A stretch of 64,000 nucleotides of DNA, taken from assembly GCA_002269645.1 (NCBI GenBank), contig NIVC01002849.1:62001-126000 (forward strand), read 5' to 3'. Both the position numbers and the translations under genes were made by a program. The notes under the pieces were generated by a model. It did no database searches. It saw only the letters and a program-made list of their open reading frames with translations, and was not told where the DNA came from. Below are positions 3,318 to 21,937 of the stretch, piece after piece. Numbering within the stretch: the first letter of the stretch is position 1; every line of letters starts with the position of its first letter. This DNA is from Macrostomum lignano (lineage: Eukaryota).

Positions 3318-14967
<11,650 letters not shown>

Positions 14968-15218: not shown

Positions 15219-15590
15219 TGCATGTGACTCAAATTGCACATGACTCAAATTGCACATGACTCAAACTGCACATGACTCAAATTGCACATGACTCAAATTG
15301 CACATGACTCAAATTGCACGTGACTCAAATTGCACATGACTCAAATTGCACATGACTCAAATTGCACGTGACTCAAACTGCACGTGACTCAAATTGCACA
15401 TGACTCAAACTGCAAATGACTCAAATTGCACATGACTCAAATTGCAAATGACTCAAATCGCACATGACTCAAATTGCACATGACTCAAACTACACATGAC
15501 TCAAACTGCGAATGACTCAAACTGCACATGACTCAAACTGCACATGAAACAAAACTGCACATGACTCAAACTGCGAATGACTCAAATGGC
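15219..15590. repeat. 16-bp tandem array (TGCACATGACTCAAAT)n, about 23 units, upstream of UVRAG
   Basis: TGACTCA recurs every 16 nt from 15225 to 15529, then at 15562 and 15578 (22 copies). Confidence 0.95.
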
Positions 15591-16696: not shown

Positions 16697-17158
16697 CTAT
16701 TTGCCAGTAATCTGGCTAATGGGATCTCGCAGCGAGTCAGCCAGTTTAGCAGCTTTCAACCGGAGCATGCCCAGCGGCACGGTGGCATTGGCGTAGAGGC
16801 ACAGCAGGATGCTGCTCACGTAGGCTATGTACAGGCTGCCATTGGTACATACAACAGTCATGTCCTGCAGGCCGGCTGGGGCTTGAGAGCTGGCAGCCCC
16901 GGCCCCTACACCGCTGCTGGGGCCTCCGACACTGGAGCTGCTGTTGCCGCCGCCGCCGCCATTCACTGAGCAGCGCTCCATGGTGTCCCACAGGTTGGCG
17001 GCGATGGCGGCCAGCACGCGGGCATCGGTGTCGGCAGTGTAGCCGGAGCAAGCTAGCAGGGCTCCGTCCAGAGATAGGAGCAGCGACGATTGAACTCCGT
17101 CTGTGTTTGTCTGGCTGAGCAGCTGCGCTACTGAGCGCGGCTTTAATGTTATTCCAGT
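16697..17158 (-). CDS. LAMTOR2: Ragulator complex protein LAMTOR2 (Roadblock/LC7 fold), 5' end lacking ATG
   Basis: The frame reads TGITLKPRSVAQLLSQTNTDGVQSSLLLSLDGALLACSGYTADTDARVLAAIAANLW...SILLCLYANATVPLGMLRLKAAKLADSLRDPISQI. It is collinear with LAMTOR2 ([53 protein letters not shown]...LLCMYAKETVGFGMLKAKA). The start is placed at the phase-0 acceptor CCGCAG|ACT (17158). Confidence 0.85.
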   Translation of the reverse strand, partial: TGITLKPRSVAQLLSQTNTDGVQSSLLLSLDGALLACSGYTADTDARVLAAIAANLWDTMERCSVNGGGGGNSSSSVGGPSSGVGAGAASSQAPAGLQDMTVVCTNGSLYIAYVSSILLCLYANATVPLGMLRLKAAKLADSLRDPISQITGK

Positions 17159-17423
17159 CTGCGGATTGGCGGCGGCGGGCTTGCATTGTCCTACTTGACT
17201 ACTGGCCAGTAATAGATGGCAGGCATTAATAGGTATAATTATGATCTAATTGAGAATAAGGGAATAACTTGAGAGTATCTTAAGTATCCAAGATAGGATT
17301 CTGGTTGTTGGGAATAGACTACAGTTACAGACATACACAATTATGCATGACAGGAGAGGTCAAGAGATCTTGATCAAAATATAACTGGGACCTCGCCAAG
17401 GACAATAAAAGATGCAGAAAACT

Positions 17424-18305
17424 CCATTACAGATGAATGGAAGGTGCAGACTCCTTTATTACAGATGAATGGAAGGTGCAGATACCTTCATTACAGATGA
17501 ATGGAAGATGCAGATACCTTTATTACGGATGACTGGAAGATTCAGATACCTTTATTACAGATGACTGGAAGATTCAGATACCTTCATTACAGATGAATGG
17601 AAGATGCAGATACCTTCACTACAGGTGACTGGAAGATTCAGATACCTTCATTACAGATGACTGGAAGATTCAGATACCTTTATTACAGATGGCTGGAAGA
17701 TGCAGATACCTTCATTACAGATGACTGGAAGATGCAGATACCTTCATTACAGATGACTGGAAGATTCAGATACCTTCATTACAGATGACTGGAAGATTCA
17801 GATACCTTCATTACAGATGACTGGAAGATTCAGATACCTTCATTACAGATGACTGGAAGATTCAGATACCTTCATTACAGATGACTGGAAGATTCAGATA
17901 CCTTCATTACAGATGACTGGAAGATTCAGATACCTTTATTACAGATGGCTGGAAGATGCAGATACCATCATTACAGATGACTGGAAGATTCAGATACCTT
18001 TATTACAGATGGCTGGAAGATGCAGATACCTTTATTACAGATGGCTGGAAGATGCAGATACCTTCATTACAGATGAATGGAAGGTGCAGATACCTTTATT
18101 ACAGATGCCTAAAAAGTGCAGATATCTTTATTAAAGGTGACTAAAAAGTGCAGATATCTTTATTACAGATGCCTAAAAAGTGCAGATATCTTTATTACAG
18201 GTGACTAAAAAGTGCAGATATCTTTATTACAGGTGACTGAAGTGCAGATACCTCCATTACAGGTGAGTTTAAGGTGCAGATACCTTTATTACCTATGACT
18301 GGAAG
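17424..18305. repeat. 32-bp minisatellite (AGATGACTGGAAGATTCAGATACCTTCATTAC)n, about 27 copies
   Basis: Visible periodicity that degenerates at both ends. Explains the short ORFs at 17597-18144. Confidence 0.92.
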
Positions 18306-18805: not shown

Positions 18806-19399
18806 TCAGACACTGCCTCGCCTATCCCTGCCCAGAGACTCCAGCTGAGTGGACAAGCTGGACAGATCCTCAGCTATGGACTGCAGGCCGCAGATGAGGC
18901 TGCTAGCTCGCTCGTTGTACACCTGCAGGGTGTCAGTCAGCTGGGACAGCTTCAGCCTGGCGGGCGACGGGATCTGCTCGCCGTCGGCGAATAAATTAAT
19001 GTTGAGGTTCACCTGCTGCTGGTGATGCTGAAGAGGATGAGGCTGAGCAGCTGTCTGCTGCTGCTGCGTTGGCTCTTTATCGACAGTCTTTGTAGATTTG
19101 TCTCGAATCGGCTGCTTCTGTCTCTGCTGCTGCTGAAATCTGTGGCGCTGCTTCGGCACCGCGGAGGCGGTCGCCGCCGCAGGCCGGACTCGCGCGGCGG
19201 TGACAGCGGCTGCGTTGGTGGCAGTTTCGGTTGTTGCAGACGCCTGGCTAACTGTGGCGGTGACAGCGGCTCGAGTCCGATTGGCCACCACGGAGGCTGG
19301 CACGGGCAGGCGGGACTGGCGCCAGTAACGACTGGCAGCGACAGCGGCCTGCTGCGATGGCTGAGCAGCGGTCCGGCTGCTGGCTGCTTTGGTGGACAT
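18806..19399 (-). CDS. Hypothetical 197-aa protein (Ala/Gln-rich low-complexity N-terminus, heptad-like C-terminal helix)
   Basis: GC-rich ORF in AT-rich flanks, with an acceptor-like TTCGCTCTCCAG 10 nt upstream of the ATG and AATAAA (minus strand) at about 18672-18677. No family recognised. Confidence 0.5.
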   Translation of the reverse strand: MSTKAASSRTAAQPSQQAAVAASRYWRQSRLPVPASVVANRTRAAVTATVSQASATTETATNAAAVTAARVRPAAATASAVPKQRHRFQQQQRQKQPIRDKSTKTVDKEPTQQQQTAAQPHPLQHHQQQVNLNINLFADGEQIPSPARLKLSQLTDTLQVYNERASSLICGLQSIAEDLSSLSTQLESLGRDRRGSV

Positions 19400-19710
19400 T
19401 GCGGATCAGCTGGAGAGCGAACAGTTATTTACCTATGACATATGAATTTACGCTCGTAAGCACTTGTCAACATGCCATCAACTGTGACAATATAGTGGAT
19501 AGCAGCATCAAAAATGTCAAATAGGAATTTTGCATCACTAATATATTTCGGTATAGAAAGGTATAAATGTAACCTGTTTTTTGCAGACATGCATGCACAT
19601 ATGTATTTAATCTTATTCTATAAACTCCAAGCGAGCTATATATAAGTTGGTGATGCCAGCTATATCCGATTGAGAGTTGCCCAGTTGCAGAGCTGCTCAA
19701 TCAAGTTTCA

Positions 19711-20130
19711 CTACTAGCAGAGCCATCCAATCAGGTGCCACCATTAGCAGAGCCATCCAATCAGGTGACACCATTAGCAGAGCCATCCAATCAGGTGCCA
19801 CCATTAGCAGAGCCATCCAATCAGGTGCCACCACTAGCAGAGCCATCCAATCAGGTGCCACCATTAGCAGAGCCATCCAATCAGGTGCCACCATTAGCAG
19901 AGCCATCCAATCAGGTGCCACCATTAGCAGAGCCATCCAATCAGGTGCCACCACTAGCAGAGCCATCCAATCAGGTGCCACCATTAGCAGAGCCATCCAA
20001 TCAGGTGCCACCATTAGCAGAGCCATCCAATCAGGTGCCACCATTAGCAGAGCCATCCAATCAGGTGCCACCATTAGCAGAGCCATCCAATCAGGTGCCA
20101 CCACTAGCAGAGCCACCTAATCAAGTACCA
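19711..20130. repeat. 30-bp minisatellite (CCATTAGCAGAGCCATCCAATCAGGTGCCA)n, 14 copies
   Basis: Exact 30-nt periodicity, with a degenerate unit on each side. Confidence 0.95.
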
Positions 20131-21937
20131 CAACTGGTAGAGCCACCAAAAGGTAACTCGTCACTACTGATACTCAGCTAAGTGCATAAGGGCAGTTGCT
20201 ACAATTCTAGCAACTATATATTTCTAGATCTGTGGCAGGAACACCACTTGGGTCTGCACTTAAATGAAAGCTTATTAGAGAAGTGTAGTAGCCTAAATAC
20301 ACCCAAATTTTGTGATATTGATACATGTATAACGATAGTGAATAGATTTCATTTTACTTTAACTTCTTATTACAAATGACTAAAAGTTTTAATTTATTTT
20401 GATTGCTAAGTTTGTTAATTTTAATTGTTTGTTTTATTTAGTCAACAATTTTTTAATTTATTACTTACTTGCATTAAACTTACTATGACATAATAAACTC
20501 AACCAAAATGAATCTATCATAGTAAATTATTTGTCAAAATGGCCAGCTTTAGATGAAATAGTCATAGCAAAAGTCTTTTCTGCCATTATTGACTTTTACC
20601 AAAAATTTCTTTGCCAAAGTAGGTTGAATCCTTGTAATAAACCCAACTAAGCCTATCTATCAATTATGAATAAATGGCAATCTTTTGGATAATAATCATT
20701 GCTTAACTTACCAGCTTTGATTGACAATCACCATTGAAATTTGTTTCTATTCTTTGTTCAAATTGTCCTGCAACTGAGTCAATTCCAAGTTGGGTACTTA
20801 CTAACATACATGCGCAACTGCTGGCCAACCTGGCCGATCTGGCCACCGTAAATTGTGGTGGACCAGGGGTAAGTCGCAAAAATGCCCAGCCTAAAGAATA
20901 CAGACGTAGTACTAATTAGATGACGGGGAATTTAGCCCTTATAAGACAGTCATAGTTACTCCTGCCGTTTACCCAAAATTGCGTTAGGGTTTCTTTCACA
21001 GGTAAGTCGCATTTTTGGTCAAAAAGTAAGTCGCATGGCCAGTGTAAATCAGGGGGGTTGCGCATGTATGGTACTTACTAAATATCCCACAAAAGTAAAT
21101 GCTATACTTTTGGTTAATTATCACTTGTATATACCAGTAACATTGAAATGATTGTCTTTTAAAATTGAAGGGGGTGCACACTGTGCTCTGTTTGTAATCC
21201 ATAGTTCTCTTTGTTTTATGCATTAAAATTGAAGCCAAAGCCTTTATGCAATGGGACCATTTTATTTCAGACATGTGCAAGCTAATGTTAGGAAGGTGTC
21301 CAGTGTATGCCATAATTTTTTAGGCAAAATTTTAGGTAAATGCCAAGTACCCCAAAAATTGTTAATGTGACTTTGTTATATACACCAAAATTTAACAATT
21401 ATACAACCTCACCTTTGTGCTACAACAATAAAGAACCTTTTAATGTTGCAACCATCAAGAAATTTTTTCCATTGTTACATTTGATATTTATGTGTACATT
21501 AAGAAAATAAGTGTCATGTCTATTTCTCCTTTACAACAACTTGCAATTACACAAAGTTCCAGTACCTAAATTCTTTAAAATAGCACTATCACATTTAATT
21601 AATAGTTTTATTTTTTGTTTGCACTCTTGTCACCTCTTAGCTGCTACCTTTTTCTTCAAAATTTATGAGATAATTATTCTAACTTTTGTTATAAAAACTA
21701 AAAGATATTTGAACCTATTTTCAAACAGTTTCTATATCACTTTTTGTATACCAAATACAACTTTTTAAGATCCAAATATGCCAATTAACTATGAAGGGCA
21801 AATGCATGCCAGAAAATTCTTTTAACCATAAACCTTTTAACCATAGTGTGCAAGTACTTTAAGGCTTAAAGTAAGTCTATTTTCTTAAAGAAATGAAGTT
21901 TGTACTTTGGAATACAATCATTTTAATGCAATTTTCA

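What the first reader, a model, noticed from the sequence alone, without database searches (positions are those of the whole stretch)
16697..17240. LAMTOR2 has no start codon: candidate for initiation on the AUG of a trans-spliced leader
Seen: the frame aligns to LAMTOR2 from residue 2 (..ACA TTA AAG CCG = T-L-K-P where orthologues have M-L-R/K-P). It has no ATG upstream until an in-frame TAG at about 17236. The only nearby ATG (17186) is out of frame. A phase-0 acceptor (GCCAATCCGCAG|ACT GGA ATA ACA TTA AAG) lies 12 nt upstream of the conserved Leu. Established: flatworm spliced-leader RNAs end in AUG, and that AUG can serve as the initiator Met. Inference: SL trans-splicing at 17158 would give MTGITLKPRSVAQLL.., so the start codon of a core Ragulator gene would not be encoded at the locus and its translation would depend on trans-splicing. 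Alternatives are cis-splicing from the upstream orphan ORF (phase-0 donor-like CAG|GTGAAC near 19012), near-cognate initiation, or a sequencing error.
Basis: partly seen in the sequence, partly recalled or inferred. Interest (0 to 1): 0.75.

Follow-up and report, generated by a model that had tools for sequence, protein, structure and literature searches.

The report
LAMTOR2 gene without its own start codon
In the flatworm Macrostomum lignano the conserved lysosomal signalling gene LAMTOR2 really has no start codon in its single coding exon, so splicing must supply one; the spliced leader's terminal AUG is the likeliest source, but this is a known flatworm mechanism, it is unproven here, and the public annotation joins the exon to an upstream gene instead.

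Summary
The window is M. lignano Mlig_3_7 contig NIVC01002849.1. On the minus strand, 17158..16697 encodes a full-length LAMTOR2. Its codon at the invariant Met1 position of MLKP is ACA (17149-17147). There is no in-frame ATG back to the stop TAG at 17248-17246, not ~17236. Two sister loci are identical across this stretch, and all four substitutions in the coding sequence are synonymous. So this is neither a sequencing error nor a pseudogene.

The AG at 17160-17159 is a real acceptor, because GenBank model PAA54869.1 uses it. The M. lignano spliced leader ends in ATG, and splicing there would be in frame, giving MTGITLKPRS.

That same GenBank model cis-splices the exon to an upstream orphan ORF, using the donor CAG|GT at 19013/19012. 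This ORF looks like a separate gene: coding-type codon bias continues past the donor, and it has its own stop and AATAAA signals. The fusion is therefore probably a chimeric by-product.

No RNA reads could be reached with these tools. I put a leader-supplied AUG at about 0.45, the fusion as the true source at 0.2, and an unannotated small 5' exon at 0.15. At best this is a new member of a known kind (Cheng et al. 2006). Interest is modest.

The parts
16697..17158 (-). Single LAMTOR2 coding exon (153 codons plus TAG stop at 16699-16697). It begins ACT GGA ATA ACA TTA AAG and has no in-frame ATG before Met at 'DTMERCS'.
   Evidence: It is exon 2 of GenBank PAA54869.1.
17147..17149 (-). Codon ACA (Thr) at the position of the invariant initiator Met of LAMTOR2 orthologues.
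   Evidence: Alignment A3. Identical in three loci.
17159..17160 (-). AG of the 3' splice acceptor (ccgccgccaatccgcAG|ACTGGA). The exon starts at 17158 in phase 0. This is the proposed SL trans-splice site and the annotated cis acceptor.
   Evidence: The junction HHQQQ|TGITLKP is in P0004.
17246..17248 (-). First in-frame stop (TAG) upstream of the exon. Its own AG is another in-frame acceptor candidate with a good pyrimidine tract.
17184..17186 (-). Out-of-frame ATG that opens a 146-codon overlapping ORF. It would capture scanning ribosomes on any unspliced transcript.
17159..17410 (-). AT-rich segment upstream of the acceptor, unusually conserved between the three loci (1 difference in 252 bp). 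Candidate outron or internal promoter, or the 3' end of an intron.
   Evidence: Fisher P=0.02 against 3'UTR plus synonymous sites.
17337..17348 (-). Unannotated mini-exon candidate ATG CAT AAT TGT|GTATGT (donor GT at 17336-17335). It is in phase with the 17158 acceptor and would give MHNC-TGITLKP.
   Evidence: It is one of 27 in-phase candidates, so it carries little weight.
17409..18305 (.). 32-bp tandem repeat, 28 copies, between the orphan ORF and LAMTOR2. Units carry TTCCAG acceptor-like and ATGAAG|GTATCT donor-like motifs.
   Evidence: Copy number is lower in L002 and L003.
18806..19399 (-). Upstream orphan ORF of 197 codons. Its first 129 codons (19399-19013) form exon 1 of the annotated fusion. 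Codons 130-197 continue past the donor with strong coding periodicity.
   Evidence: No homologue found.
19011..19012 (-). GT of the cis donor CAGCAGCAG|GTGAAC, phase 0, used in PAA54869.1. It lacks the G at +5 of the GT[G/A]AG motif.
   Evidence: Motif from PMC8629364.
18672..18682 (-). Two overlapping AATAAA signals about 125 nt after the orphan ORF's stop, suggesting it has its own 3' end.
19410..19411 (-). AG of CTCTCCAG|, a full match to the published trans-splice acceptor motif [T/C]TNCAG. The exon that would start at 19409 puts 10 nt between this site and the orphan ORF's ATG (19399).
   Evidence: Motif from PMC8629364.

Best explanation
The M. lignano LAMTOR2 coding exon has lost its own initiator ATG (now ACA). 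It depends on a splice at the 17158 acceptor to acquire one.

The most likely source is the 35-nt spliced leader, whose last three bases are AUG. Trans-splicing at 17158 puts that AUG in frame and yields MTGITLKPRSVAQLL..., that is LAMTOR2 with the four residues Met-Thr-Gly-Ile ahead of the Thr that replaces the ancestral Met1. It also removes the upstream out-of-frame AUGs.

The pre-mRNA comes either from an internal promoter in the conserved 250 bp upstream, or from a polycistronic transcript that includes the upstream orphan gene. On such a transcript the same acceptor is occasionally cis-spliced to a weak donor inside the orphan ORF. That event would give the chimeric transcript behind GenBank model PAA54869.1.

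Shown: there is no genomic start codon, the acceptor is real and in phase, the gene is under purifying selection, and the SL ends in AUG.

Inferred: the SL is actually joined at 17158, its AUG is the start used, and the fusion is a minor product.
For: 1. Thr (ACA) aligns with the invariant Met1, and L-K-P-R is retained. Translation must therefore start at or upstream of 17149.
2. There is no in-frame ATG down from the stop at 17248. The ATGs at 17226 and 17186 are out of frame.
3. The three loci are identical here. Substitutions in the coding sequence are 4 synonymous to 0 nonsynonymous. These loci are the only LAMTOR2 genes found for the species.
4. The acceptor at 17158 is used in a transcript-derived GenBank model, and it is phase 0.
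5. The SL ends in ATG. About 30-39% of M. lignano genes are trans-spliced, with enrichment among conserved genes (PMC8629364; PMC5730564).
6. SL-AUG initiation is documented. [quoted passage not shown] It has been noted for Macrostomum (PMC10468722).
7. The two sister loci are annotated as 5'-partial single-exon genes with neither the upstream exon nor a start codon.
8. The orphan ORF looks like a separate gene. GC by codon position is 0.56/0.43/0.79 past the donor. That segment shows zero divergence. It has its own stop and AATAAA signals. Chimeric fusion models of neighbouring operon genes are a known artefact in flatworm annotations, and acceptors there are widely shared between cis- and trans-splicing (PMC12582326).
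9. The spacing from the orphan gene's AATAAA to the acceptor is about 0.6 kb once the repeat is subtracted. That is below the 1 kb operon threshold.
10. Crystallised LAMTOR2 constructs carry short N-terminal extensions, so four extra residues are tolerable.
Against: - No SL-containing read or transcript could be examined. No M. lignano transcript-derived proteins are in the searchable collections, and junction searches found nothing.
- The annotators' TBONE pipeline cuts transcripts at SL-read peaks. It neither cut the fusion model at 17158 nor set the 5' end of the partial models there. Those models start at Val, 17131, which is 27 nt inside the exon. So no strong SL peak was recorded at 17158, though multi-mapping across three near-identical loci or low depth could explain that.
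- CCGCAG lacks the T at position -5 of the enriched [T/C]TNCAG motif.
- A complete in-frame cis-spliced alternative is annotated at this very locus.
- 27 in-phase ATG...|GT mini-exon candidates lie upstream.
Confidence: 0.45

Rival explanations
1. The annotated fusion is the real gene. LAMTOR2 is made only as a 282-aa protein whose first 129 residues come from the upstream exon (ATG 19399, donor 19013/19012), cis-spliced to 17158.
For: GenBank PAA54869.1 (BOX15_Mlig016944g2) has exactly this structure, with a phase-0 GT-AG intron. Donor, acceptor and exon 1 are conserved in all three loci, and the only indel is in frame. The annotators' pipeline did not split the model at an SL site.
Against: - The ORF runs 68 codons past the donor with strongly coding codon-position bias, zero divergence, and its own stop and polyA signals. 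The unspliced form is therefore the selected one.
- The donor GTGAAC is weak against the published motif.
- The fusion is not annotated at the two sister loci, although their exon sequences flanking the junction are identical.
- None of the eight orthologues aligned carries an N-terminal extension; MLKP is their N-terminus.
- The upstream part has no homologue anywhere.
- Chimeric operon gene models are a known flatworm annotation error (PMC12582326).
Confidence: 0.2
2. An unannotated short 5' exon supplies the ATG by ordinary cis-splicing to 17158. Examples are ATG CAT AAT TGT|GTATGT at 17348-17337, or ATG AAG|GTATCT from a 32-bp repeat unit.
For: Several ATG...|GT combinations are in phase with the acceptor. 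The 250 bp upstream of the acceptor is unusually conserved. That fits a promoter plus a first exon and a small intron.
Against: No public model contains such an exon. The sister-locus models end inside the LAMTOR2 exon and are flagged partial. With 27 candidates in 1.6 kb, such patterns arise readily by chance. GTATGT and GTATCT do not match the species' GT[G/A]AG donor motif.
Confidence: 0.15
3. SL trans-splicing occurs at a different acceptor. One option is 17245 (the AG of the TAG stop, good pyrimidine tract, in frame), which would add a 32-residue hydrophobic extension. Another is 17130 (CAG|TAG), which gives AUG-UAG and no full-length protein.
For: The in-frame acceptor at 17245 has the best pyrimidine tract (0.78). 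The partial GenBank models start at 17131, one base from the 17130 site.
Against: 17158 is the only acceptor with transcript support. 17130 cannot encode the conserved LKPR residues. 17245 would add a signal-peptide-like IIIIPINACHLLLA segment to a cytosolic scaffold subunit. The segment 17245-17159 shows no coding periodicity.
Confidence: 0.08
4. Initiation is at a near-cognate codon (for example AUA at 17152-17150) on an unspliced mRNA, or the gene is a decaying pseudogene, or the missing ATG is an assembly error.
For: ATA lies one base change from ATG, one codon before the Thr.
Against: The three independent loci are identical here, which rules out a sequencing error. The 4:0 ratio of synonymous to nonsynonymous changes and the intact ORF argue against a pseudogene. 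Upstream out-of-frame AUGs, including a 146-codon ORF, would pre-empt scanning ribosomes. AUA is a very weak initiator (general knowledge).
Confidence: 0.05

Closest known systems
Flatworm mRNAs that use the spliced leader's 3'-terminal AUG as initiator Met (Cheng, Cohen, Ndegwa & Davis, J Biol Chem 2006; 'slORFs' of PMC9851317)
   Same: The SL ends in AUG. The acceptor sits directly in front of the conserved N-terminus and in frame. The recipient exon has no usable genomic ATG.
   Different: That work was in Schistosoma mansoni and used cDNA and translation assays. Here there is only genomic inference in a free-living macrostomid, with no SL-junction read, and a competing annotated cis-splice uses the same acceptor.
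Chimeric gene models and shared cis/trans acceptors in flatworm operons (PMC12582326, Mol Biol Evol 2025)
   Same: Two same-strand neighbouring genes are fused in the annotation through the downstream gene's 5' acceptor. The upstream gene has its own stop and polyA signal. One acceptor could serve both splicing modes.
   Different: That study covers parasitic flatworms and defines such sites from SL-read counts. Here the chimeric nature is inferred from codon bias and conservation only. The fusion here is also in frame, so it could encode a real chimeric protein.
LAMTOR2 / p14 / ROBLD3, the Ragulator roadblock subunit (PDB 1VET, 5X6U, 6EHP and others)
   Same: Colinear over its full length, 47-50% identical to bilaterian orthologues, with a Robl_LC7 domain and the conserved LKP...LSQ.NT.GVQ and LLC.Y motifs.
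   Different: Met1 is replaced by Thr. There is a Gly/Ser-rich insertion of about 24 residues in the central loop, whose length differs between loci. The gene is present in three near-identical copies.
Outron 'sanitisation' by SL trans-splicing in nematodes and ascidians
   Same: Trans-splicing would discard upstream out-of-frame AUGs (17348, 17334, 17226, 17186).
   Different: In nematodes the SL does not usually supply the start codon. Here it would be the only source.

Membership tests
LAMTOR2 (Ragulator roadblock subunit) | Roadblock/LC7 domain | tested here: met
   Pfam PF03259, E 1.8e-10, 40.9 bits against a cut-off of 23.
LAMTOR2 (Ragulator roadblock subunit) | Full-length colinear similarity to LAMTOR2 specifically, rather than to dynein roadblock or LAMTOR3 | tested here: met
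   47-50% identity to 8 named LAMTOR2 orthologues, with 46 invariant columns. All 12 PDB hits are LAMTOR2/p14, E 3e-25 to 1e-23.
LAMTOR2 (Ragulator roadblock subunit) | Genomically encoded Met1 directly before L-K/R-P | tested here: not met
   The codon is ACA (Thr) in all three loci. This does not affect family membership of the protein, only how it is initiated.
SL-AUG-initiated ORF (Cheng 2006 type) | The organism's spliced leader ends in AUG | tested here: met
   The SL is CGGTCTCTTACTGCGAAGACTCAATTTATTGCATG, from PMC8629364. The window was identified as M. lignano Mlig_3_7 by a 100% match.
SL-AUG-initiated ORF (Cheng 2006 type) | Functional 3' splice acceptor at the 5' edge of the first coding exon, in frame with the ORF | tested here: met
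   AG at 17160-17159, phase 0. It is used as an acceptor in PAA54869.1.
SL-AUG-initiated ORF (Cheng 2006 type) | No usable in-frame genomic AUG between the acceptor and the conserved N-terminus | tested here: met
SL-AUG-initiated ORF (Cheng 2006 type) | SL sequence actually joined to this acceptor in mRNA | not testable with these tools
   No M. lignano reads or transcripts are reachable. The exact-protein look-up of MTGITLKP... was negative. Junction scans of metagenome contigs were negative. The annotators' pipeline did not place a boundary at 17158.
SL-AUG-initiated ORF (Cheng 2006 type) | Translation starts at the SL AUG | not testable with these tools
   This needs ribosome profiling or N-terminal peptide mass spectrometry.
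Downstream gene of an M. lignano operon (Ustyantsev & Berezikov 2021 criteria) | Same-strand upstream gene within 1 kb after subtracting repeats | tested here: met
   From AATAAA at ~18672 to the acceptor at 17158 is ~1.5 kb. Subtracting the 897-bp tandem repeat leaves ~0.6 kb. This assumes the orphan ORF is a gene.
Downstream gene of an M. lignano operon (Ustyantsev & Berezikov 2021 criteria) | The downstream gene is SL trans-spliced | not testable with these tools
   As above, no read data.
Genuine fusion gene (orphan N-terminus + LAMTOR2) | In-frame GT-AG junction conserved in the paralogues | tested here: met
Genuine fusion gene (orphan N-terminus + LAMTOR2) | Sequence past the donor behaves as intron, not as coding sequence | tested here: not met
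   GC by codon position is 0.56/0.43/0.79 and GC is 59%, against 34% in the following 3'UTR-like stretch. There are zero differences in 207 bp (P=0.012 against flanks).

The most novel reading that the evidence does not exclude
All three homeologous LAMTOR2 copies of M. lignano have permanently lost their genomic start codon. A core Ragulator/mTORC1 subunit can then be translated only from the AUG donated by the spliced leader. The same acceptor is sometimes cis-spliced to a lineage-specific orphan gene, giving an in-frame chimeric Ragulator subunit. If so, nutrient-signalling capacity would be coupled to trans-splicing activity, which in this animal is strongly associated with stem-cell genes.
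Probability: 0.4. Interest if true: 0.4.

Novelty: new member of a known kind. Interest (0 to 1): 0.3.

Why it matters
If confirmed, this is a clean case in a free-living model flatworm of a deeply conserved housekeeping gene whose start codon exists only after trans-splicing. That would extend the schistosome findings of Cheng et al. 2006 to Macrostomorpha.

Its practical value is mainly for annotation:
- The GenBank models for this gene are either a probable chimera (282 aa) or 'partial'.
- Pipelines that trim the leader together with its ATG will systematically mis-call such genes.
- It warns anyone designing LAMTOR2 knock-down or transgenic constructs in M. lignano that the genomic locus alone does not encode a translatable ORF.

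It opens no new mechanism.

Tried and rejected
- **Sequencing or assembly error:** rejected. Three loci are identical across the acceptor and first codons.
- **Pseudogene:** rejected. Changes are 4 synonymous to 0 nonsynonymous, the only indel is in frame, and these are the only LAMTOR2 copies found.
- **Transcript evidence through protein collections:** exact look-ups of MTGITLKP..., MERCS... and variants were absent. Only GenBank and UniProt genome-derived models exist.
- **Metagenome-contig scans:** the SL-exon junction and the exon start each gave 0 hits.
- **Papers and supplements:** searches for Mlig016944, Mlig026703 and LAMTOR2 found nothing.
- **Identity of the upstream ORF:** Pfam gave nothing at E up to 10 beyond noise. 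An exhaustive HMMER search of 1.84 billion representatives gave 0 hits. It remains an orphan.
- **Operon membership from locus tags:** I searched with the ATG14-like first exon to read the tags. It returned no hit and used the last protein search.
- **Flatworm LAMTOR2 orthologues:** the Drosophila-type query returned 604 hits, but the 120 listed contained no flatworm. The question of whether ATG loss is Macrostomum-specific stays open.
- **Known RNAs in the window:** the SL sequence, Rfam families and tRNAs were all absent.
- **The Val start (17131) of the 'partial' models as a trans-splice site at CAG|TAG (17130):** considered and set aside. It would give AUG-UAG and could not encode the conserved LKPR. 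An SL-read peak there should also have split the fusion model at the identical sequence in this locus.

Full report
**Source and gene identity**

A protein search with the translated frame returned only Macrostomum lignano proteins. The window is 100% identical over 8 kb to contig NIVC01002849.1 of assembly GCA_002269645.1, Mlig_3_7. Window coordinate = 29400 minus L001 coordinate.

The gene lies on the minus strand. Reading from 17158 down to the TAG at 16699-16697 gives TGITLKPRSVAQLLSQTNTDGVQSS...ITGK. This product:
- hits Pfam Roadblock/LC7 (E 1.8e-10);
- hits only LAMTOR2/p14 chains in the PDB (E about 3e-25);
- is 47-50% identical over its full length to LAMTOR2 from insects, a brachiopod, a mollusc, echinoderms, a lamprey and amphioxus.

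It carries a Gly/Ser-rich insertion of about 24 residues in the central loop.

**Checking the observation**

In the alignment every orthologue begins M-L-K-P. The M. lignano frame has T-L-K-P, with ACA (17149-17147) under the Met. The frame stays open upstream for 32 codons, to TAG at 17248-17246.

That stretch has no in-frame ATG. There are two out-of-frame ATGs (17226 and 17186), not one. The second opens a 146-codon ORF overlapping LAMTOR2. Two more ATGs (17348, 17334) lie a little further upstream.

The stretch 17245-17159 has no coding periodicity: GC by codon position is 0.55/0.45/0.45, against 0.60/0.55/0.69 in the exon. The coding exon therefore really begins near 17158, behind ccgccgccaatccgcAG.

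**Not an error and not a pseudogene**

The assembly holds two more copies, L002 on NIVC01003463.1 and L003 on NIVC01001937.1. They are 94-97% identical to the window over several kb. Across the acceptor and the first codons all three are identical.

Within the 459-nt coding sequence the copies differ by four substitutions. All four are synonymous (P about 0.005 if neutral). There is also one in-frame GGC indel in the Gly run. The 3'UTR differs at about 3%.

No other LAMTOR2 was found for the species. These are therefore the working genes, and none has its own start codon.

**What the public annotation says**

The 90% cluster of this protein holds three GenBank products.

PAA54869.1 (BOX15_Mlig016944g2, 282 aa) is encoded at this very locus. 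It starts at ATG 19399, runs 129 codons to CAGCAGCAG|GTGAAC (donor GT at 19012-19011), and is spliced in phase 0 to ACTGGA at 17158: ...HHQQQ|TGITLKP.

The annotation was built from RNA-seq and a de novo transcriptome (PMC5730564). The junction therefore shows that 17158 is a genuine 3' splice site.

At the two sister loci the gene is a 5'-partial single exon starting at Val (GTA, equivalent to 17131), with no start codon and no upstream exon. Yet donor, acceptor and flanking exon sequences there are identical.

**Is the upstream ORF part of LAMTOR2 or a separate gene?**

The ORF does not end at the donor. It continues for 68 more codons to TGA at 18808-18806, 197 codons in all. Several features point to a separate gene:
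- The part past the donor has the clearest coding signature in the region. GC by codon position is 0.56/0.43/0.79 at 59% GC overall, and GC drops to 34% straight after the stop.
- That part shows no difference among the three loci, whereas the flanks differ at 2-5% (P=0.012).
- About 125 nt after the stop lie two overlapping AATAAA signals, 18682-18672.
- Just upstream of its ATG is CTCTCCAG|, with the AG at 19411-19410. It is a full match to the published M. lignano trans-splice acceptor motif [T/C]TNCAG.
- The donor GTGAAC lacks the +5 G of the species' GT[G/A]AG motif.

The protein has no homologue among 1.84 billion representative sequences and no Pfam match.

I conclude that it is most likely an independent, lineage-specific gene, and that the 282-aa model joins two genes. 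Fusion of neighbouring operon genes into chimeric models is a documented problem in flatworm annotations. So is use of one acceptor for both cis- and trans-splicing (PMC12582326).

One oddity remains. The orphan ORF's two substitutions are both nonsynonymous and none is synonymous. Its low divergence may therefore reflect gene conversion or nucleotide-level constraint rather than protein-level selection.

**The spliced-leader hypothesis**

The M. lignano leader is CGGTCTCTTACTGCGAAGACTCAATTTATTGCATG. About 30-39% of genes receive it, with strong enrichment among genes conserved with human (PMC8629364; PMC5730564).

Joined at 17158, its terminal AUG is in frame and gives MTGITLKPRS.... This splice would also discard the four upstream out-of-frame AUGs. 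PDB constructs of LAMTOR2 with 2-7 extra N-terminal residues still form complexes, so a four-residue extension is plausible.

After subtracting the 897-bp tandem repeat, the distance from the orphan gene's AATAAA to the acceptor is about 0.6 kb. That is inside the 1-kb repeat-adjusted operon criterion.

The 250 bp before the acceptor are also unusually conserved, with 1 difference in 252 bp (P=0.02). This would suit an internal promoter or outron.

The mechanism itself is established. In S. mansoni the leader AUG is in frame in 28% of trans-spliced mRNAs, and more than 40 cDNAs need it (Cheng et al. 2006, as summarised in PMC9851317). The authors of the M. cliftonense and M. hystrix genomes state that the Macrostomum leader likely contains the final ATG as a translation start codon (PMC10468722).

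**What weakens it**

I could not reach any RNA read:
- No transcript-derived M. lignano proteins exist in the searchable collections.
- Junction scans of metagenome contigs were empty.
- Paper supplements do not list the gene.

The annotators' TBONE step places gene boundaries at peaks of SL-trimmed reads. It set no boundary at 17158. The fusion was not split, and the partial models start 27 nt further in. This suggests no strong SL peak was recorded, although multi-mapping over three identical copies or low depth could explain it.

CCGCAG is only a partial match to the acceptor motif.

Other acceptors exist. 17245 is in frame with a better pyrimidine tract, but would add a hydrophobic 32-residue extension. 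17130 would give AUG-UAG and cannot encode the conserved LKPR.

Finally, 27 ATG...|GT combinations in phase with the acceptor lie between the two genes. They include ATG CAT AAT TGT|GTATGT at 17348-17337 and ATG AAG|GTATCT in eleven units of the 32-bp repeat. An unannotated cis mini-exon therefore cannot be excluded. Their abundance also means none carries much weight.

**Verdict**

The missing start codon is real, fixed in all copies, and compatible with purifying selection. The start must come from splicing at or near 17158. My estimates are:
- about 0.45 for the spliced-leader AUG at 17158;
- 0.08 for another SL acceptor;
- 0.2 for the annotated fusion as the true source;
- 0.15 for a hidden cis mini-exon;
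- about 0.05 for near-cognate initiation or other explanations.

Even if the leading explanation is right, it is a further example of a mechanism described in 2006 and already noted for this genus. I rate it as a new member of a known kind, with modest interest. Its main value is to flag mis-annotated models. The decisive test is simple and uses existing public data: count SL-bearing against cis-junction reads at 17158.

Noticed in passing
window 5997-14371: An (ACAG)n microsatellite of about 2200 units (8.4 kb), with almost no T on the plus strand. It begins right after the first coding exon of the downstream ATG14-like gene (ATG at 14967, minus strand). The same repeat is much shorter at paralogue L002. 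It is either an extreme locus-specific expansion or an assembly artefact.
   Followed up: partly
window 17409-18305: A 32-bp tandem repeat of 28 copies here, and far fewer in L002 and L003. Each unit reads TTCCAG|TCATCTGTAATGAAG|GTATCTG: a consensus trans-splice-type acceptor, an ATG, and a donor-like site in phase with the LAMTOR2 acceptor. Whether these decoy splice signals matter is unknown.
   Followed up: partly
window 19399 down to 5995, and L003 10001-20435: Same-strand string of the orphan ORF, LAMTOR2, an ATG14-like gene (588 aa), and in L003 a TRAPPC10-like gene. These are lysosome, autophagy and trafficking genes in a row, possibly one polycistronic unit.
   Followed up: no
window 18806-19399: The orphan 197-codon ORF is much less diverged between the three loci than its flanks (2 substitutions in 594 bp against 2-5%). 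Both substitutions are nonsynonymous and none is synonymous. This points to gene conversion or nucleotide-level constraint rather than ordinary protein-level selection. It has no homologue in 1.84 billion representative proteins.
   Followed up: partly
window 16746-17186: The out-of-frame ATG at 17186 opens a 146-codon Arg/Pro-rich ORF overlapping almost all of LAMTOR2. It is probably a by-product of the GC-rich coding sequence, but it would be the first long ORF on any unspliced transcript.
   Followed up: no
window 16880-16965: LAMTOR2 has a Gly/Ser-rich loop insertion (NGGGGGNSSSSVGGPSSGVGAGAASSQAPAG) that is absent from other animals. The Gly run differs in length (5 or 6) between loci.
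   Followed up: no
L002 13201-13770 (equivalent to window 14967 downward): A search with the 188-aa apparent first exon of the ATG14-like gene found no protein at all, not even the annotated 588-aa M. lignano product. The real first exon may be much shorter than the open frame suggests.
   Followed up: no
window 15225-15587 and 19715-20149: Two further tandem repeats flank the gene pair, with periods of 16 bp and 30 bp. Intergenic DNA here consists largely of short-period satellites.
   Followed up: no
protein P0002 (UniProt A0A1I8F6M1): The older M. lignano assembly carries a frame-shifted, start-less model of the same gene, misnamed 'F-box/WD repeat-containing protein 7'.
   Followed up: no
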